From positions 558,001-622,000 of the forward strand of contig NC_087455.1 of assembly GCF_036321535.1 (NCBI RefSeq): DNA of 64,000 nt, read 5' to 3'. Below are positions 13,201-36,216 of the stretch, piece by piece; within the stretch, counting starts at the first letter, position 1; every line of letters begins with the position of its first letter. The position numbers were made by a program, and so were the translations under genes. The notes beneath the pieces are model-generated. The model did no database searches, was not told the origin of the DNA, and saw only the letters and a program-made list of their open reading frames with translations. Source of the stretch: Camelus dromedarius. Taxonomy: Eukaryota.

Positions 13201-16200
13201 CCCCCGAAAATCAAAAGGAAGAGATGAAGTGCCCGGCCCTGAGCTCTGCAGGTTCTGCTCACAGTCCGCCAGAACTCGGCGGGCCAACTTGGTCTTGGCC
13301 AACCTGCCCTCAGGGAAGCGGGACACAGTGGTTCCGCTGGGTCCGTAGCTGTGATGGACTGGAACCAGAAACCTAGGTGCCCCACAAAAAGATGTACTCC
13401 CTAAAAAATGTGTCATAGGGAGATATATATAGTTTAAAGCTTTGTACATGCATTACTTTCGTTCTAGGATTTGGCTTGAATTTTGGTTTGTTTTATGGCT
13501 GTAAGCACTGTTTTAAAACCCCACCTCCATTAATAGATGGGACAGGCCCCACTCAGGAACAATCCTTCTCCAAGGAAAGCCTCACATGGCTGAAAAGTGA
13601 ACGCAGTAACAACCCTCTTTAAGTAAAAACGTACAGCTTATATCTGGGGAAAATACAATGTCCTACTGATGGGGTCACTCCCGGCTGCGGCTTTGTCTTG
13701 TTTTGTCTTTTGCTTTTCAGTAGTGTGTTAAAATACGCGTAACAAAGGTCACCATCTTAACCGTCTCAAGAGCACAGCTCAGTAGCACCAGACACATTCG
13801 GCTTGTTGTGTGACCAGCACCACCACCGTCCACCCTCATCCCTGTCACTCTCTTCATCTTGTAAAACTGAAACACTGTCCCCATGGAACACCAACCCCCA
13901 TTCCCCTCCCCCAGCCTGGCACCCACCTTTCCACTTTCTGTCTCTGATTGGACTATTCTATAACTCCTGTAAGTGGAATCATATAGTATTTGTCCTTTTG
14001 CGACTGGCTTATTCCACTGAGTATACCGTCCTCACAGTTCATCCACGCTGTAGCAGGTGTCAGAATTCACTTCCTTTTTAAGGCTGAATAATATTCTATT
14101 GTCTGGAAGGACCATATTTTGTTCATCCATCCATTCACTGATGGGCACTTGGGTTGCTTCAACCTTTTGACTAATGTGATCAATGCTGCTATGAACACGG
14201 GTGTGGAAATACCTNNNNNNNNNNNNNNNNNNNNNNNNNNNNNNNNNNNNNNNNNNNNNNNNNNNNNNNNNNNNNNNNNNNNNNNNNNNNNNNNNNNNNN
14301 NNNNNNNNNNNNNNNNNNNNNNNNNNNNNNNNNNNNNNNNNNNNNNNNNNNNNNNNNNNNNNNNNNNNNNNNNNNNNNNNNNNNNNNNNNNNNNNNNNNN
14401 NNNNNNNNNNNNTTTGTGACAGTAGCGGTCACGATGTTTGCGAGGTGGTGTTTCATTGCAGTTTCAATTTGCATTTCTCCAGTGATTAGTGATGTTGGGC
14501 ATCCTTTCATGTTCTTATTGGCCATTCATGTATCTTTTTCAGAGAAATGTCTAGTCCAGTCTTCCACCCATTTTTCAATTGGGCTGTTTGGTTTTTCTGC
14601 TGTTGAGTTTTAGGAGTTCTCTATATATTCTGGATATTAATCCCTCATCAGATGTATGATCTGCAAATACTTTCTCCCATTCTGGGGGCTGCCTTTCTAC
14701 TCCATGGATAGTATCTTTTGATGTACAAATTATGAAAAATTTTATTAAGTCACATTTGTCAATTTTTTTCTTCTGTTGCCTGCTTTTTGGTGTCAAAGAA
14801 GTCACAGCCAAGTCCAATGTCCTCATGCTTTTGTCCTATGTTTTNNNNNNNNNNNNNNNNNNNNNNNNNNNNNNNNNNNNNNNNNNNNNNNNNNNNNNNN
14901 NNNNNNNNNNNNNNNNNNNNNNNNNNNNNNNNNNNNNNNNNNNNNNNNNNNNNNNNNNNNNNNNNNNNNNNNNNNNNNNNNNNNNNNNNTCCTTCCCCCA
15001 CTGAATGGTCTTAGTGCCCTTGTTGAAAATCATCTGACCACACATGTGAGAGTTTGTTTCTGGGCTCTCTATTCTATTCCTTTGGGCTACGTGCCTGCCC
15101 CTGTGCCAGCACCACACTGGTTTGATTACTGTAGCTTTGTAGTTAAGTTTTGAAATCAGGAAGCGTGGGTCCTCCCACTTTGTTCTTTTTGGGGAATGTT
15201 TTTGCCATTCACAGTCCTTTGAGATTCCTTATGAATTTTAGGATGGGCTTTTCTATTTCTGCAGAAAATATCATTGGGATTTTGCTAGAGACTGCAACAG
15301 CTACTTATTTTTAAAGAAAAGGCTGTATTTCCATTTTATGTTGCTCTCGAGAGCTCAACGAGCAGAGGAGTGACTCTCGGAGGTCCCCCTGATAGAGTGG
15401 TCGGTTGGGCCTCACCAGGCCCCCAGGCCCCTTGCCATCCTCACACAGCGGGAACTGAACCGAGGCAGCTTGCGGACGACACAGGCAGGGCCTTTGGGAG
15501 GGATCAGGCTGTGACGGGGAGCCCTGGGGAATGGGATTAGTGCCCCCAGGAAGGAAATCCCAGGGAGCTCCCTCACCCCTTCTGTCAGGTGAGGACTCGG
15601 GGGAAGCAGGCTCTCACCAGGCACTGAACCTGCCAGCACCCTGATCTTAGGACTCCCAGCCTCCAGAACCATGAGGAACAGGCCTGCTGTCTGTAAGCCA
15701 TCCAGCCTGTGGCGTTCTGTCACAAAGGCCTGGGCAGACTAAGCAGCTCTCTCTGCCGCTCTTCCCAAGGCCACTTCCCGCCCACTGGCCTGACAGTCTC
15801 TGTGAAGCAGCCTGTTTGTCCCTGTGTCCACCTCTTCCATGCTGAGCCTCGGCCAACAGGAGTGAGGCCCGCCACCACCCAGGAGCACAGACCAGGTCCA
15901 GCTGCGGGAGAGCAAAGGTGCCCCAGTGCCCCGGGCGGCAGCAGAAGCTGCCAGAAGCTGATATCCACAAAGTATCGCGGGCTTTCAAGCTGCTGCCCCA
16001 CCTTTGATGACCAGATGGAGTGTTCGGCTCTTTTCTGTGGGCCCACATCTTTTTGGAGAGAGACTCAGTCAGCTAAGATGCAGCCAATACAGTATGGCTA
16101 TGAAGAAGCACAAGCGAGGGAAAGAAGCCCCCGGTCACAGGGCGTGGACGAGGCGGCAGAGGCCGGGGGTGCCCAACAAGGGTTATGCTCTAAGGACAGC

Positions 16201-21749: not shown

Positions 21750-21878
21750 NNNNNNNNNNNNNNNNNNNNNNNNNNNNNNNNNNNNNNNNNNNNNNNNNNN
21801 NNNNNNNNNNNNNNNNNNNNNNNNNNNNNNNNNNNNNNNNNNNNNNNNNNNNNNNNNNNNNNNNNNNNNNNNNNNNNN
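21750..21878. other. Assembly gap (129 N)
   Basis: Run of n inside L1. Confidence 1.
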
Positions 21879-29695: not shown

Positions 29696-31781
29696 TTAAA
29701 CACCAGGGTAGGGTGGCAACTGAGTAGTGCCTGGGAGGTGGGGGCATTCTTTCACAGAGAAAGGCTTCAGCCTGTTTCTGTTGCAGGGATTCAGACCAAA
29801 AGAGAACTCGGATGGCGAAGAGAGTGCGGTCCTCAGCAGATGGCGTCTGGCCCCTCAGGAAGAGCCCCACCCCCACCCACCCCAGATTTCCCCACAGGCA
29901 GGAGGGGGAGGGGTGAGCCCAGGCATGTGGAAGTTGCCAGGGAGGGAGGCAGGAGGCCTTTTCCAAGCTCACACCTGGACCTGGACGGCTCACTCTCCCT
30001 TAGTTCCCATGGCCAGCGCCTAGCAAGCCCAGCTGGCTGGCCCTGCCCCTCCCCAGCCTCAGCTCGATTTCTTCACCCGCCAAGCAAACAAGCTGCCCCA
30101 GCACAGGTCACAGCCGTCTTTGAACTTTGATTAAATTCTTAAGGCTAATCTCCCTTCCACAACGGCAAGCTCTGTGAGAGAAAGGCCCCTGTCTGTGATT
30201 TGCTCCCAAGGGCTCAGCACCAAGCCCAGTACTTGGCAGGCACTCAGTGAAGGTCCGTGAAGTAGCTGGATGAGCCAGGGTGCAGAGAAAGAGGAAGGTG
30301 GACAGAGCTGGTGATCATTCTGGATCCTGCCTGTCATCTGCCCAGGCAACAGTCACTGGCTTCCAGTTGTGTTCTGGTACTGGTGGGAGCCAGGAATGTG
30401 AGGGGGGCACAGCACAGACACCCTTGGCCGGAGCCACATGGTTTTCCCTTTTGCTGCTCCAGCTTGGACATGGCACTCTCCAGCCTAAGTAACACCTGAG
30501 TAACTATCCCAAGTTAAAGCCCCTCCGCTTGAAATACCTGGAGCGGTTTCTATTTTCCTAAACCTCAGGTCAGCAACAAACCAGTTAGTTTGTCCATATT
30601 GTCTATATTCCAGGCAACTTGCCAGAACGGGGCTATAGGGGAGCAAGGGAGCATCAAATGCAAGCCCGCTCTCAAGAAGCTCAAAATCCAGCGGGGATGA
30701 GATGTGTCTTACTCATTCACGAGCGAGTACTCTGAGGCTCTCCCTGCACTGGGAGTAATACCTCACCCACCGTGAATCCCAGGGGGACAAGCCAAGTTCA
30801 CAGACCCTCCCAGGACAGCAGCCACAGCCACTGTGCATCCAGCTCACAGAAGAGATACCATGAATTTGGGCCCCATGTGTGTCATCTGTAAAAGGGGTAT
30901 CACTTGGTGGTGCTCAGATTTGAAATCCTGGATGTGAACCGTCTACCACAGGACAGGCACATCGGTCGTAACTGTGAACAAAAGCAGACTGCAGGAGGGG
31001 CGGCTGCAGCTCCTAGGAACGCTTTGAACAGCACCTGGCCCATGGCAGGCACTCAGCAAACAGTAGGCGGCTACTCCCCAGCATAACAGCACCCACAGGA
31101 CTCCAGGGCCCAGGAGACAGGAGGGGACATGTTGGCTCCTCTCTTCTGGAGCTGGAGGGTTGAGGTAGGCCCTTGCAGATCTTTGCTTGCCTGGGGAAAT
31201 GTCATCAAGTGTGCAGAGAGCTCTAGGGGAAAGCCTGAGCAGAAGCTTTAGTCCCCAGCAGAGGAAGGCTGAGTGGCTCCCCCACATGCCAGCTTCTTTG
31301 AAGGCCTTTTATGGCCAGCCAGGGTGGCCCAAGAGGCCTCACCCTGGCTCTAGCCCTTAGGGTTCTCATCCTACCAAGTGGGACCCATGCAGGGCAGGAA
31401 TGGTTCCAGCAAGATGTCTTTAGAGCAGGCAAGTCCTGGGGGACAGGACAGCCCCTTCAAGGGCACAATGCAGGTATGGCTCTAGAACCTGCCCCTGCTT
31501 TCCCAGACCCTGCCCTCCCCCACGCCAGTTCATGCTTGTGTAGCTGGGTTAGCCTCCCATCCTGAGCTCTCAGCCCCGGTCACTCTCCCGTCTGAGCCCC
31601 AGTCCCAGCAAGAATTCAGAAACTGGGCAGCAGCCTTGAGGGGGTGCAACTGGCCTCCTGCAGCCCCATCACCCCTGCCCCTCTAACACAAGTTAGGCCT
31701 CAGCCGTGCCTCCCAACCCCCTCCCCAAGACCCTGCAGTGAACTGGACGGCCCCACCCTCTTCTGCAGTGCCCTGCCCTCC

Positions 31782-33181
31782 ATGAAGGGCAGTGGCAGCA
31801 AAAACCGGACTAGAAAACCTTCATGGAGCAGGTGCGTGAATGCAGGGACAAGGGCTACCTGCTCTCCTCCAAGAAGAATGGCTCTGGGGCCTTCCCCAAA
31901 GTCTGCCCGACCTATGCCATGTGAGAGCACATGTGGCACAACTCAAAGCTGGCCTCTAACCTGCGACGCAAACACTGTACCATGGTGAGGTCGGCTTGCC
32001 TCCTCCCCATGGGCCCCTGTCCTAACTCCACTCAGGCACCCCTCAGGGCCTCTGGCTCCCTCCTGGTCCCACAACCTCCCTGAGGGCCAAGCCTCCTGCA
32101 GGCTGATCACTCCCAGTTTCCAGACGCCCTGAACATATAAGTTCTTGGATGAGGGGGGTCAGCGCTGGCCCCCAGAGATGCTGCCAACCCTACCTGGCCC
32201 AGCCAAGTTCCACAGTGAGCACAAAGAACAGAGGCCCCTCACGCCGCATCCTGCCCCGAGGGGCTGTGGTCTCCCCACAGGGGCCACCCCCAACCCCTGC
32301 AAGCAGCTATCAAGGCCACCTCCACCTCTGAGGCCCCGCAGGCTCTCCCGCTAGTTCCTGCCCGTGAGATCCTGTCACTCAGTGTTGCCTACAAGCACCT
32401 ACATGTGGTGGAAGGGACCCCGGGGCCAACCTGTCCCCATCCTGCCCACTCCAGGCTTGCACCCTTCCCCACCAGGGACCGTTATGCTCAGGCCCAACCC
32501 CATCCTGAGACCCCAGTCCAGTGCCTGGACAGCCCCTCCTTGGGACAATAGCAGGTGCAGGTGGGTGGGAGTCTGGCAGGTGCAAGAGACCTGCCAGAAC
32601 AGCCAGCGCTCCTACTTGATGCTGAGTGCCAGGACCCCATCCGAGGCCTGCTCCAGCTGCAGCCCCAAGTGCACCTGGGCCTGCAGCAGGTGGCTAAGCA
32701 CCACGCACGCGCTCTTCTGCACCCTGCTCGGTTTGTACCAGGTGTGACAGGCCCACGAGGGTGGGCAGGTGGGCAGCTCCTCAGCACCTCCTGCGCCCCA
32801 CCCACCACCATCTGACGGTCCCACTGCAATTGGTTGCAGAGAAGCTGGAGGAGTCTCAGCTCTCAGCGTCCCTGGATAACACGGAGCCCAGCTCAGACTC
32901 AGATGCCCCAAGGCCCCTCCTGCAACTGCGGCGTCTGCAGCAACAGGGCGCCCTACCCAATGGCACCTCCGTGCCTGAGCACCCTGGGGCTCGCCCCAGA
33001 CGAGGTGCGGGCTCTGCCGGGCTGGTGCTCTGGGGCTTGGAGGAGGCCAGTCGTGGGGCGCAGCGGGGTAGGTCCCTCCGGCATCCGCTGTTGCTGTGCT
33101 CCGTGTCTGCCACCCAGAACCTGCCTGGGCACCACCTGTTAACCGAGGGTGTGCAGGCAGGCCGGGGTGAGGCCAGATAAA
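31782..33181 (+). pseudogene. TSSK5: Testis-specific serine/threonine kinase 5 unitary pseudogene
   Basis: Recognisable TSSK5 pieces: exon 1 31782-31984 (..FMEQVRECRDKGYLLSSKKNGSGAFPKV..HNSKLASNLRRKHCTM), exon 2 ~32303-32407 (AIK..EAP..FLP.EILSL..YKH), ETCQNSQRSYLML then ECQDPIRGLLQLQP..LQQVA at ~32580-32741, and DNTEP at 32875-32889. Disrupted by frameshifts, TAG 31811, TGA 31922, TAG 32352 and loss of HRD/DFG/APE. Syntenic position between HGH1 and MROH1. Confidence 0.9.
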
Positions 33182-33184
33182 GCG

Positions 33185-33190
33185 TTTATT
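33185..33190 (-). terminator. Probable HGH1 polyadenylation signal AATAAA
   Basis: TTTATT on plus, ~1.28 kb past the HGH1 stop codon, at the 3' end of the convergent TSSK5 remnant. Confidence 0.6.
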
Positions 33191-34466
33191 CTGTGGAGCC
33201 GAGGGTGTGGACTTCACAATACAGGAAGAGGGCCGCAGGCCCTGGGGCACCTCGAAAAGAGTCCACATACCTACATGCCAGAGCTTTCATTTAATTGGGA
33301 GGGAAGGGGGAATAGAGAGGGACTACTGAGGAGGGAGATACCTGGCACCACAAAGAACCCAGCCTTGATGGGAGTGGGCAAGTGGAGCTACCTCCAGCTT
33401 TAAGGCAGTACCAGACTGAGACTTGTGGAGTCGGGGGTATTGGGAACTCTTGGGAAGAGAAGCTACCCTCTGGCACCAGGGTACAAGGGGCCTGGGAGGG
33501 CCAGTACACAGGGGTCCTGTGCAAAAGATGGCACTAGGTTTGGTGGGAGGCTCTGGAAGAGAGTACAGTGGGGTGAGGGCCACACAGACAGCCTACCAGT
33601 GACAGTCTTCAAGGCTTGGTGGCTGAAGAATTGGGGGTACCACACATGGAGCCAGGGGCTCCAAGGGGGCAGAGGGTGGTGGGGAAAAAACCTTGGACCA
33701 TGGGCAAGGCTGCAGGCGTATCAGGGAGGCTCTCAGCATGGTAGGCAAGGGGTTCTGGGGAGCTGAGACTCAGGGAAGTTGACCAGGGAGAGGGCCTAGC
33801 TATTGGGAGAGGGCGAGGGCATCAGCTTAGTCCAGAACTGGGAAACAGGACTCGAGGAGCTTGCACGGGGCTGAGAACTGGGTTTGAGCAAGGTCAAGTG
33901 GGAAGGTGGAGAGGATGAGAGGGAGTGCTCCAGGGAGAGGCCAGGGGGATGCAGCCCTAGGAGGCTCCAGGACAGGTTGTGGCTGGTGAGAATCTCAACA
34001 AGTCAGCCCTTTGAGGCCGAGTCTCAGGCAGGGCAAGCTGAGGGCCCCAGGACAGGACTGGCAGCAAGGGGCACTGCAAGCACCTGGGTGCCCACCTACG
34101 CCCAGACCACTGCAGCACCCCTGGGACTGGGAAGCTTCAGCTGACCCCTCCAGCTTGCAGTACTTTTCTGTCCAGCCTCATAGGACACCCCGAGGATGTA
34201 CCTGAGCAAGTCATAGGGCCTGGCCAGCTCTGGTTGAACATTCCTTCTCTGAGCAACCAGCATTCTTGCTGGAAGCAACAGTGCCCTCAAAACTTCAGTG
34301 TTTCCTGAGCACTCGCTCTAGGGCCCTCAGCAAGGACCTGGAGCTTACAGGTGGCTCTGCTTCTCAGCAGCGCACAGCCTCAGAGCAAGGGGACCCGGAG
34401 GCCTGCCGGCAGCTGCAGATGGGTCTGGTCTGGGAAGCCTGGAGCTGGTGGCGGGCTTCAGGGGCC

Positions 34467-36216
34467 TCAGGTGGGTGCAGCTCCCTCTGCTTGTGGCTCT
34501 GGAGCCAGTTCCTGCTCCTGACGCTTCTGCGCACACTGCTCCTGGTCCTGGAGGTCCTGCTGCTGCAGCTCTCGCTCAATATCTTCGGGCACCTGCACCT
34601 CCAGCAGGTTCTCCATGCCGTGCTCCGGCTCGTCCCCAATAAGCACCTGCCAGCAGGGCAGGCAGGTGAGCAGCTGGCTAGCACACCACGCTCACCCACC
34701 ACCCCCCTAGCCCCGCACCCACCTGGATGAGTTTCTCACAAGCCATCCGCACATCGGGCTCTGACTCCCAGCTGTGCAGCTCACGCAGGATCAGGTAGGC
34801 TCCCTGGTCTCTCACCTGCTTCCGACCAGGCGCCGTTGCTGTCAGCTGGGAGAGGACAGAGGTTACCCAGATGTTGTGTACTTGTGTGTGTTGCGGGGGG
34901 CATTAATGTAGCAGGACCGCTGCTCACCAGCATGATGGCCTCAATGAGCATTTTGCGGATGTCGGCATCAGACTCTCGCTGCTTGTCTGACGGCAGGTAC
35001 TGCAGGTCAACAGGCAGCCCTAGGGGTGAATGTGGGAGTCACTGGGTCCCTATGTGGCCCCTGGGCTGATATGCCAGACCCTACCATTGTAAGCCAAATC
35101 TGTGCTTAGCTCCCTGCTGGAATGTTTCAGAAGAGGCCCTGACCTGGACACCTTCTCCCTCTCCCCTAATGGCCTCCCTTCCTGCCTAGCCAACCCTGAG
35201 GCTCAGCCCAAGCCACTCACGCTCCATCTCCTCCTCAGAGAAGTCCTCAGGCCCAGCCAAGGGCAGTAGCAAGAAGGGGAGAATGTCCACCTCGGGCCCA
35301 AGCAACCACTCATGGTGTCCTGGGGGAAATAGGAATGGAGGCCAGTCCAGAGGGGCCCCAGTCCAATCTATCCCCCCCCCCATTCTCCGACATGGCAATT
35401 TCCCCACCACCACTCACGGTGCTCGAAGCAGCAGTTTCGCAGTGTCCCCACCACCCCGCCCCTGCGCACCGAGGAGTCCGCGTATTGGGTAAGGGGCAGC
35501 AGCCGCTGGACCACGCACCTGGAGGGAAGGACCACTCAGTGCCGTCCCTTCTCACTTTCACCCCCTCCCAGCGAGCACCCTGGGCTTCACCTGTCGCGGT
35601 CCAGCAGGAAAGCGCGCGTGGCGGGACGCTGGCTGAGGTTAGAAAGCACAGGCCCCAGGTAGTGAAGGGGCGCGCGGGGGTTGTAGCCGGGAGTGCACAG
35701 CGCTCGAACCAGCCGCTCCAGGCCCGTCTCCACCGGCTCCGCGGCCGCCAGCGCCGCCATCAGCGCAGCACACGGCGCCGGCTCGCGGCTGAGGTTAGCC
35801 AGCACGGCGGCCGCCTCTTCGGCCCAGGGCCACTGTGGGTCCAACGCGCAGCCCAGCAGGCGGGAGGGCAGCCCGGGCTCGGCCGCCAGCAGCGGATCGT
35901 ACAGGCCGGGGTCGGCGGCCAGATTGACGAGCGCGCGAGCGGCGTCTCGGGCCGGGGCGGGAGCAGGGGCCACCGCGAGCTCGACCAGCGCCCGCAGCAG
36001 TGCCCCTTGGCCGGCCAGCAGCGTGCGGCCCGGCTCCGAGCCGGTCAGCGCCAGCACGTGCTGCGCCGCCGCCGCCTGCAGGTCACCCCGCGCTCCGAGC
36101 GCCAGGAAGGGCAGCAGCTTCGCAGCCGCCGCCTTCGGGCCGGCCTCTGGCATCGGCGACCCTACGGAAGCGAGGCTGCCGGCTGACGCGCCCGAGTCAG
36201 CCCCGGCGTCCCCCAT
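34467..36216 (-). CDS. HGH1: Protein HGH1 homolog (eEF2 chaperone, ARM-like), 406 aa, 6 exons
   Basis: Exons 35591-36216, 35418-35518, 35221-35319, 34928-35019, 34723-34845, 34467-34646; 1221 nt; all GT-AG. Translation MGDAGADSG..KLLPFLALGARGDLQ..LDPQWPWAEEAAAVLANLSREP..RCVVQRLLPLTQY..RNCCFEHRHHEWLLGPEVDILPFLLLPLAGPE..EKLIQVLIGDEP..AAPT* matches recalled HGH1/FAM203A. Confidence 0.96.

What the first reader, a model, noticed from the sequence alone, without database searches (positions are those of the whole stretch)
31782..32407. TSSK5 is inactivated: multiple independent lesions in exons 1-2
Seen: the ATG at 31782 is out of frame by 1 nt with the TSSK5-like frame. That frame carries TAG at 31811 (GAC TAG where D-Q is expected) and TGA at 31922. 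The Gly-rich loop reads NGSGAFPKVCP instead of IGSGAFSKVYL. The exon 2 acceptor appears mutated (ctgcAA|gca gct atc aag). Exon 2 has further 1-nt deletions and TAG at 32352. Known: TSSK5 is intact in mouse and a pseudogene (TSSK5P) in human. Inference: if this is a camelid, it is probably a second, convergent loss of a sperm kinase in a non-primate lineage. I recall cattle TSSK5 as intact but have not verified it.
Basis: partly seen in the sequence, partly recalled or inferred. Interest (0 to 1): 0.72.

Follow-up and report, generated by a model that had tools for sequence, protein, structure and literature searches.

The report
Dead TSSK5 sperm-kinase gene in camelids
Camels and alpacas carry only a wrecked remnant of the testis kinase gene TSSK5, broken before the two groups split; pigs and whales lost the same gene separately, so this is a real but fairly ordinary gene loss.

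Summary
Window 31782-33180 (+) is the syntenic remnant of TSSK5, lying tail-to-tail with HGH1, in a dromedary genome.

Compared with the intact 8-exon genes of horse, ibex and dog, it carries these lesions:
- exon 1: a 1-nt deletion and CAG>TAG (31811);
- exon 2: a destroyed acceptor (AG>AA, 32301-2), a 2-nt deletion, AAG>TAG (32352) and a 1-nt deletion;
- a ~1.4-kb deletion (junction 32623|32624) that removes the whole catalytic core;
- a 17-nt deletion in exon 7;
- loss of the original stop codon.

All of these are identical in dromedary, two further Camelus assemblies and alpaca, so the gene died before the camel-llama split. The TGA at 31922 is Camelus-only. Alpaca has its own extra TGA.

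Assembly error is excluded: four assemblies and independent run contigs agree.

Ruminants, horse and dog keep an open gene, and human TSSK5P is open through codon 101. The camelid loss is therefore independent. It is not the "second" loss, though: pig plus warthog, and blue whale plus Kogia, carry different disabling lesions at the same locus.

The searched literature describes only the primate loss. An intact copy elsewhere in the camel genome is unlikely but was not searched for exhaustively.

The parts
31782..31984 (+). TSSK5 exon 1 remnant (203 nt, against 204 in intact orthologues). It holds the conserved ATG at 31782, a 1-nt deletion after 31797, CAG>TAG at 31811-31813, a degraded Gly-rich loop at 31877-31909, and TGA at 31922-31924 (Camelus only). 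The donor GT at 31985-31986 is kept.
   Evidence: (E = 7e-19 to donkey TSSK5)
32301..32407 (+). TSSK5 exon 2 remnant with a destroyed acceptor (AA at 32301-32302 instead of AG). The exon body is 32303-32407. It has a 2-nt deletion after 32337, AAG>TAG at 32352-32354 and a 1-nt deletion after about 32360.
   Evidence: All four lesions are identical in dromedary, two other Camelus assemblies and alpaca, and absent from pig, whales, ibex, horse and dog.
32580..32623 (+). 5' stub of exon 3 (acceptor AG at 32578-32579). It has an in-frame 6-nt deletion after 32585 (the Leu-Tyr codons) and ends at the large deletion.
32623..32624 (+). Junction of a ~1.4-kb deletion (about 1387 nt in horse coordinates). 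It removes 153 nt of exon 3, all of exons 4, 5 and 6, and introns 3-6. That is 458 coding nt (about residues 122-273), including the HRDLKCEN catalytic loop, DFG and APE. The two sides join out of frame. Microhomology at the junction is only 1-3 nt.
   Evidence: (collinear break in whale, horse, ibex and dog; none in alpaca); (no match to residues 122-270 anywhere in the window)
32624..32741 (+). Exon 7 remnant (kinase subdomain XI, E-C-Q-D-x-I-R-G-L-L-Q-L) with a 17-nt deletion after 32703 and small indels near 32730. Donor GT at 32742-32743.
32839..33180 (+). Exon 8 remnant (C-terminal tail; acceptor AG at 32837-32838). Camelid-specific indels relative to ibex, whale and dog: -6, +7, -1, -1. 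The ancestral stop TGA is changed to CGA at 33144-33146. The frame now runs on to TAA at 33178-33180. Dromedary and the other Camelus assemblies differ here by a 3-nt and a 1-nt indel.
   Evidence: (E = 8e-30 to Bos TSSK5)
35590..36216 (-). HGH1 exon 1, the synteny anchor. HGH1 lies tail-to-tail with the TSSK5 remnant, as in every other mammal examined.

Best explanation
[quoted passage not shown] It cannot encode a kinase.

Why no kinase can be made:
- The reading frame is broken 16 nt after the start codon, and a stop follows at codon 11.
- Exon 2 has lost its splice acceptor and carries a second stop.
- A ~1.4-kb genomic deletion has removed exons 4-6 and most of exon 3. With them went the catalytic loop, the DFG motif and the activation segment.
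- Exon 7 has a 17-nt frameshifting deletion.
- The original stop codon is gone.

Timing and independence:
- At least nine of these lesions are identical in Camelus and alpaca. I therefore infer that the gene was already dead in the last common ancestor of living camelids.
- After that the remnant drifted neutrally, picking up lineage-specific stops (TGA at 31922 in Camelus, a different TGA in alpaca).
- The loss is independent of the catarrhine primate loss. It is also independent of separate losses in suids and in cetaceans, because ruminants, which branch inside that group, keep an intact gene under purifying selection.

Shown: the lesions, their sharing across species, the synteny, and the intact state in the outgroups.
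Inferred: which lesion came first, the date of loss, and that no protein or functional RNA is made.
For: Identity and synteny
- tblastn of donkey and Bos TSSK5 hits exon 1 (E = 7e-19), exon 7 plus exon 8 (8e-30) and, more weakly, exons 2 and 3, in collinear order.
- HGH1 lies tail-to-tail 1-1.4 kb away, exactly as in horse, ibex, dog, whale and pig.
- The neighbouring gene in horse, ibex and dog is a Pkinase gene of 406, 415 and 398 aa. I rebuilt each as an 8-exon GT-AG model of exactly the annotated length.
- A search with the hyena TSSK5 recovers these as TSSK5 / TSSK5-like proteins, mouse TSSK5 included.

Lesions

Not an assembly artefact
- The window is identical to GCA_000803125.3. It differs by only 9-11 SNPs and 3 indels, none touching a lesion, from GCA_048773025.1 and GCA_009834535.1.
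- Alpaca GCA_048564905.1 is collinear across the deletion junction at 93.4% identity.
- Runs from 11 studies hold 41-100% of the stretch's words.
- Laid contigs of four runs show no change at any lesion they cover.

No coding gene recognised
- No gene is called there in the Camelus ferus/bactrianus or alpaca annotations.
- No camelid protein appears among the 120 best TSSK5 hits.

Relaxed constraint
- dN/dS for dromedary against alpaca is about 2.3-2.7 on few changes, against 0.15-0.30 between intact orthologues. The camelid stem is intermediate at 0.44.

Independence
- None of the camelid lesions occurs in pig, whales, ibex, horse or dog.
- Human TSSK5P is reported open through codon 101 (PMC7401350).
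Against: - Only assembled contigs (Logan), not raw reads, could be laid. One of them (run X3) may come from the same sample as the window.
- Lamini are represented by a single alpaca assembly.
- I could not search whole camelid genomes, so an intact duplicate or retrocopy elsewhere is excluded only indirectly. The evidence is its absence from the listed annotated proteins; only 120 of 180 hits were shown.
- RNA-library contigs from the other Camelus type cover exon 1, intron 1, exon 2 and intron 2 at low depth. The locus may therefore be weakly transcribed, although the contigs are unspliced and could be DNA carry-over.
- The dromedary CamDro3 annotation has an odd 1204-aa ab initio gene call spanning this region, with no Pfam hit.
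Confidence: 0.93

Rival explanations
1. The lesions are assembly or sequencing errors, and the living animal has an intact TSSK5 at this locus.
For: The region is GC-rich (about 0.6), which can cause indel errors in some technologies. The window differs from another dromedary assembly by a 26-nt indel in intron 1.
Against: Every lesion is identical in four assemblies from at least three species. Contigs of independent runs reproduce them, including runs carrying the alleles of the other Camelus assemblies. Eleven studies hold the stretch. A ~1.4-kb deletion with the same junction in camel and alpaca cannot be a read error.
Confidence: 0.01
2. This is a decayed copy, and a functional TSSK5 (a duplicate or retrocopy) survives elsewhere in camelid genomes, so there is no real loss of function.
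For: Other TSSK family members arose by retroposition (PMC7401350).
Against: The remnant sits at the ancestral syntenic position and keeps its introns, so it is the orthologue and not a copy. HGH1 from four camelid RefSeq/GenBank annotations is in the searched protein collection, yet no camelid TSSK5 is among the best 120 hits, which reach down to fish. No other TSSK5 note exists for this genome in the scan.
Confidence: 0.04
3. One ancient loss in the cetartiodactyl ancestor explains the camelid, pig and whale pseudogenes, so the camelid loss is not independent.
For: Three of the four major cetartiodactyl groups sampled (camelids, suids, cetaceans) lack an intact gene.
Against: Ruminants, nested among them, keep an open 8-exon gene with dN/dS of 0.17-0.30. 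No disabling lesion is shared between the three groups. Each group has its own set: camelids the exon 1-2 lesions and the exon 3-7 deletion; suids the loss of exons 1 and 4 plus their own frameshifts; cetaceans the ATG loss, a +4 insertion and the exon-3 donor loss.
Confidence: 0.01
4. The remnant has been kept for a non-coding role: as a transcribed lncRNA, or as part of the HGH1 3' UTR, which appears to run antisense through its 3' half.
For: RNA-library contigs cover much of the stretch (41-68% of words). A ~3.1-kb contig at higher depth runs from about 32580-32637 rightwards out of the laid stretch towards HGH1. Human TSSK5P is transcribed in brain (PMC7401350).
Against: Contigs cannot show strand, ends or splicing. 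No spliced joints were seen, and the low-depth pieces are collinear with the genome, introns included. Dromedary-alpaca divergence across the remnant (6.6%) and the indels between the Camelus assemblies in exon 8 give no sign of constraint.
Confidence: 0.07

Closest known systems
Human / catarrhine TSSK5P (unitary pseudogene at 8q24.3; Zhang et al. 2010, PMC2864566; Salicioni et al. 2020, PMC7401350)
   Same: It is the same gene, and its reported 8q24.3 location matches the region that holds HGH1. It is an unprocessed pseudogene with no reported functional counterpart. It is also a testis-kinase loss in a lineage that keeps TSSK1/2/3/4/6.
   Different: It is an independent event. The human gene is reported as translatable for its first 101 codons (exons 1-2) before a premature stop. 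Camelids are already frameshifted and stopped by codon 11, have lost the exon-2 acceptor, and have physically deleted the catalytic core. The human sequence itself was not examined here.
Intact mammalian TSSK5 (mouse P0308, 372 aa; horse, ibex and dog loci L005, L004, L009)
   Same: Orthologous locus between MROH1 and HGH1. The 8-exon layout is the same and the camelid remnants align to it. Residual identity to horse is 82% in exon 1 and 72% in exon 2.
   Different: The intact genes are open, have canonical GT-AG introns and carry HRDLKCEN, DFG and APE. They evolve at dN/dS 0.15-0.30. The camelid sequence has none of these properties.
Suid and cetacean TSSK5 remnants
   Same: Same locus, same kind of decay, same order (Cetartiodactyla).
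   Different: The lesion sets differ. In suids, exon 1 is unalignable (SINE-containing sequence lies there instead), exon 4 is deleted, and they have their own stops and frameshifts. Cetaceans keep all eight exons, but share loss of the ATG (7-nt deletion), a 4-nt insertion and loss of the exon-3 donor, plus species-specific stops.

Membership tests
TSSK5 orthologue (unitary pseudogene of TSSK5) | Best sequence similarity is to TSSK5 rather than to other kinases | tested here: met
   tblastn of donkey and Bos TSSK5 gives E = 7e-19 and 8e-30. Exon 3 of the syntenic horse gene retrieves proteins that a follow-up search with the hyena TSSK5 names TSSK5 / TSSK5-like, mouse TSSK5 included. No direct comparison with TSSK1-4 or TSSK6 was made.
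TSSK5 orthologue (unitary pseudogene of TSSK5) | Conserved position: tail-to-tail with HGH1, between MROH1 and HGH1-WDR97 | tested here: met
   HGH1 exon 1 lies at 36216-35590 (-). The arrangement is the same in whale, ibex, horse, dog and pig. A Maestro-HEAT gene lies beyond TSSK5 in Kogia.
TSSK5 orthologue (unitary pseudogene of TSSK5) | Unprocessed: keeps the parental exon-intron structure | tested here: met
   Remnants of exons 1, 2, 3, 7 and 8 align with the exon borders of the horse, ibex and dog 8-exon models, and introns 1, 2 and 7 are present.
TSSK5 orthologue (unitary pseudogene of TSSK5) | Unitary: no functional copy elsewhere in the genome | tested here: inconclusive
   No camelid TSSK5 is among the 120 best of 180 hits, although camelid proteomes are in the collection. 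No other scan note exists. Whole-genome search was not possible with these tools.
TSSK5 orthologue (unitary pseudogene of TSSK5) | Disabling lesions that are fixed, not polymorphic or artefactual | tested here: met
   The lesions are identical in four assemblies of at least three species and in contigs of independent runs. Population-level raw reads were not examined.
Active protein kinase (Pfam PF00069 Pkinase) | Catalytic loop HRDLKxxN, DFG motif and APE / activation segment present in an open frame | tested here: not met
   The region encoding about residues 122-273 is deleted. No piece reaches any Pfam kinase hit. The Gly-rich loop is mutated.
Processed (retrotransposed) pseudogene | Intronless copy at a non-syntenic site with a poly(A) remnant | tested here: not met
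   Introns are retained and the position is syntenic.

The most novel reading that the evidence does not exclude
TSSK5 is a recurrently discarded gene. It was lost at least four separate times in mammals (catarrhine primates, camelids, suids, cetaceans) while staying under purifying selection in ruminants, horses and carnivores. If the losses track a shared change in sperm biology or mating system, or compensation by another TSSK paralogue, the pattern would show what this enigmatic, possibly catalytically odd kinase is for.
Probability: 0.15. Interest if true: 0.6.

Novelty: new member of a known kind. Interest (0 to 1): 0.36.

Why it matters
TSSK-family kinases are studied as male-contraceptive targets. 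TSSK5 is the least understood member. [quoted passage not shown]

This work shows that statement is incomplete:
- Camelids lost the gene before their crown radiation.
- At the same locus, pigs plus warthog and baleen plus toothed whales have lost it independently.

Repeated natural knockouts in fertile lineages argue that TSSK5 is dispensable in some reproductive contexts. They also give comparative material for asking what replaces it.

The practical consequences are modest:
- annotation pipelines should label the camelid, suid and cetacean loci as pseudogenes, since some whale models currently splice around the lesions;
- camel reproductive genetics need not look for TSSK5.

This is an ordinary kind of event, a lineage-specific unitary pseudogene of a testis gene. 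It is not a new mechanism.

Tried and rejected
- Pfam and PDB searches on the stop-free pieces of the remnant (36, 21, 36, 63 and 113 aa) found no kinase. The only hits were chance matches to PRDM9 zinc fingers. The pieces are too short and too decayed.
- The search for homologous proteins with the 113-aa C-terminal piece found nothing within the allowed length band.
- Alpaca HGH1 isoform X2 was not on record as a gene product. Isoform X1, found through its cluster, worked.
- Logan/ENA contig L010, fetched as a possible pig sequence, turned out to be caprine with an intact TSSK5.
- My first two splice-model scripts failed on search-window limits. The third gave models matching the annotated lengths.
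- Dating by dN/dS is only rough. Stem omega of 0.44 against about 0.24 in functional lineages would put inactivation in roughly the last quarter of the stem. The many shared lesions (more than 10, against 1-2 on each terminal branch) suggest an earlier loss. I do not regard the date as resolved beyond 'before the Camelus-alpaca split and after separation from other cetartiodactyls'.
- The 'GAG microhomology' proposed in the sister note for the deletion junction holds only loosely. The outgroup flanks read ...GCTG|GAGCTG... and ...GCAG|AGTGCC..., and the junction reads GCTGAGTGCC, which gives 1-3 nt of ambiguous overlap.
- Exon-8 'stops' listed in the horse frame are artefacts of horse's own different exon-8 acceptor and deletion. 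I ignored them.

Full report
**What is in the sequence.**
- An ATG lies at 31782.
- A TSSK5-like frame starts one base out of register with it. That frame holds TAG at 31811 and TGA at 31922.
- The Gly-rich loop reads K-N-G-S-G-A-F-P-K-V-C-P.
- A second kinase-like stretch (A-I-K ... R-E-I-L-S-L ... Y-K-H-L) lies at 32303-32407 behind CTGCAA instead of a CAG acceptor. It holds TAG at 32352.

On their own these pieces are too short and too decayed for Pfam or PDB to recognise. Identity therefore had to be shown through orthologues.

**Species and locus.**
- The long open frame at 36216-35590 (-) is HGH1 exon 1 (Pfam DUF383). It is 100% identical to Camelus HGH1 and 98% to alpaca.
- I used HGH1 proteins as anchors to fetch the neighbouring DNA from other genomes.
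- In horse, ibex and dog the gene lying tail-to-tail with HGH1 is an annotated Pkinase gene of 406, 415 and 398 aa.
- Exon 3 of the horse gene retrieved a set of proteins. A search with one of them, the hyena TSSK5, returns proteins named TSSK5 or TSSK5-like across amniotes and fishes, mouse TSSK5 included.
- tblastn of donkey and Bos TSSK5 against the whole window hits exon 1 (E = 7e-19), exon 7 plus exon 8 (8e-30) and, more weakly, exons 2 and 3, in collinear order. Nothing in the 64 kb matches residues 122-270.
- The feature is therefore the syntenic, intron-containing TSSK5 locus.

**Reference models.**
From the horse, ibex and dog loci I rebuilt 8-exon GT-AG models. Exon lengths are 204, 108 (105 in ibex), 203, 56, 133, 116 and 135 nt, plus a variable last exon. 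The translations have exactly the annotated lengths and are 98-99.7% identical to database TSSK5 proteins. All three carry HRDLKCEN, DFG and APE.

**Lesion catalogue** (MAFFT alignments and per-exon table).

Shared by the dromedary window, dromedary GCA_000803125.3, the two other Camelus assemblies and alpaca:
1. a 1-nt deletion after 31797;
2. CAG>TAG at 31811 (codon 11);
3. exon-2 acceptor AG>AA at 32301-2;
4. a 2-nt deletion after 32337;
5. AAG>TAG at 32352;
6. a 1-nt deletion after about 32360;
7. an in-frame 6-nt deletion in exon 3;
8. a ~1.4-kb deletion with its junction at 32623|32624. It removes 153 nt of exon 3, all of exons 4-6 and introns 3-6, which is 458 coding nt, and it joins the two sides out of frame;
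9. a 17-nt deletion in exon 7;
10. several indels in exon 8 and loss of the ancestral stop (TGA>CGA at 33144).

Also shared are radical replacements at otherwise invariant Gly-loop positions (S>P, Y>C, L>P).

Lineage-specific lesions:
- CGA>TGA at 31922 in Camelus only;
- CGA>TGA in exon 7 in alpaca only;
- a 3-nt and a 1-nt indel in exon 8 between dromedary and the other Camelus assemblies.

**Are the lesions real?**
- Over 31400-33400 the window has no mismatch to dromedary GCA_000803125.3 apart from a 26-nt indel in intron 1.
- It differs from the other two Camelus assemblies by 9-11 SNPs and 3 indels. None of these is at a lesion.
- Alpaca aligns collinearly through the deletion junction at 93.4% identity.
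- Sequencing runs from 11 studies hold the stretch.
- When contigs of four runs were laid on 31600-33300, one 7.2-kb contig was identical throughout. It may come from the source sample.
- Three other runs carry the alleles of the other Camelus assemblies. They showed only those known SNPs and indels, and no change at any lesion they cover.
- Only contigs, not raw reads, were available.
- An artefact is nevertheless not credible, because many identical lesions recur in four assemblies.

**Independence.**
- None of the camelid lesions is present in pig, blue whale, Kogia, ibex, horse or dog.
- Ruminants are intact: the ibex model, the caprine contig L010, and the Bos, Ovis, Cervus and Odocoileus proteins.
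- The literature states that human TSSK5P is translatable through its first 101 codons and was lost after the platyrrhine-catarrhine split (PMC7401350 and PMC2864566). The primate event is therefore unrelated.
- The same locus is also dead in suids. In pig and warthog, exon 1 has no alignable counterpart (SINE-containing sequence lies in its place) and exon 4 is deleted, with further stops and frameshifts. The two remnants are collinear at 96.6% identity.
- It is dead in cetaceans too. Blue whale and Kogia share the loss of the ATG through a 7-nt deletion, a 4-nt insertion and the loss of the exon-3 donor. Each also has its own stops.
- Ruminants branch inside this group and are intact, and no lesion is shared. 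These are therefore three separate losses within Cetartiodactyla.

**Selection.**
Nei-Gojobori estimates were made on the codons retained in camelids.

| Comparison | dN/dS |
|---|---|
| intact orthologues against each other | 0.15-0.28 |
| inferred ancestor to camelid stem | 0.44 |
| dromedary against alpaca | about 2.3-2.7 (only about 15-28 changes; consistent with no constraint) |
| blue whale against Kogia | 0.8-1.1 |

This fits a gene that was functional for part of the camelid stem and has been neutral since. The exact date is not resolved.

**Expression.**
- RNA-library contigs from the other Camelus type, filed as 'reproductive system', cover exon 1, intron 1, exon 2 and intron 2. Depth is low, they are collinear with the genome, and no spliced joints were seen.
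- A deeper ~3.1-kb contig runs from about 32580 rightwards out of the laid stretch towards HGH1. It is probably HGH1 mRNA with a long 3' UTR antisense to the remnant.
- Contigs cannot prove strand or transcription, so this stays an observation.

**Novelty.**
- Full-text searches for TSSK5 with 'camel', 'gene loss', 'pseudogene' and 'knockout' found only the primate loss.
- They also found statements that mouse TSSK5 may not be an active kinase.
- Large gene-loss catalogues may list the camelid loss without discussing it. I could not check that.
- The finding is a new lineage for a known kind of event.

**Caveats.**
- No whole-genome search was made for a second copy.
- Alpaca is a single assembly.
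- No raw reads were laid.
- The human sequence was not examined directly.
- The N runs in the window (14215-14412, 14845-14989, 21750-21878) lie far from the feature and were left untouched.

The scan's sister note s1-193403 (deletion fusing the N-lobe to the C-lobe) describes the same deletion, and this work confirms it.

Noticed in passing
L013:13300-16400 (pig, GCF_000003025.6) and L015:13127-16242 (warthog): The suid TSSK5 locus is also a pseudogene. Exon 1 has no alignable counterpart (SINE-containing sequence lies there instead), exon 4 is deleted, exon 3 holds stops, there are several frameshifts and DFG has become VFG. The pig and warthog remnants are collinear at 96.6% identity, and no gene is annotated there. 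The lesions differ from the camelid ones.
   Followed up: partly
L001:12557-15921 (blue whale) and L014:12600-15900 (Kogia breviceps): Cetacean TSSK5 keeps all eight exons but is disabled. Both species share loss of the ATG (7-nt deletion), a 4-nt insertion in exon 1, and a 4-nt deletion plus donor loss at the end of exon 3. Blue whale adds TAG in exon 5, TGA in exon 7 and K>N in the HRDLK motif. Kogia adds TAG in exon 7 and frameshifts. Whale-whale dN/dS is about 0.8-1.1. Even so, the blue whale annotation carries a 367-aa model, and the database entries P0144, P0148 and P0369 look like models spliced around lesions.
   Followed up: partly
window 32004-32017 (intron 1 of the remnant): The window lacks a 26-nt segment that is present in dromedary GCA_000803125.3, in both other Camelus assemblies and in the run contigs that carry their alleles. 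It is absent from the window and from the contig of run X3. It is probably a segregating or assembly-specific indel in a short repeat.
   Followed up: partly
window about 32580-33300 and rightwards: In two RNA libraries a ~3.1-kb contig at 4-5 times the depth of the upstream pieces starts at about 32580 / 32637 and runs out of the laid stretch towards HGH1. Its length fits a spliced HGH1 mRNA whose 3' UTR runs about 1.9 kb antisense through exons 8-7 of the TSSK5 remnant. An AATAAA on the minus strand lies near 33190.
   Followed up: no
one search hit list: TSSK5-like entries flagged 'LOW QUALITY PROTEIN' or partial occur in Panthera, Suricata, Castor, Cebus and Tiliqua. These are candidates for further lineage-specific lesions or for assembly errors.
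   Followed up: no
L005, L004, L009 exon 1 (intact orthologues): In intact TSSK5 the Gly-rich loop reads G-S-G-A-F-S, with Ser where kinases usually have the third Gly. This agrees with the doubts in the literature about ATP binding or activity. Even so, the gene evolves at dN/dS 0.15-0.30 in horse, dog and ibex.
   Followed up: no
L007:12008-17151 (dromedary GCA_000803125.3): The deposited annotation has a 1204-aa gene call without any Pfam hit across the TSSK5 remnant. It is probably an ab initio artefact in GC-rich sequence.
   Followed up: no
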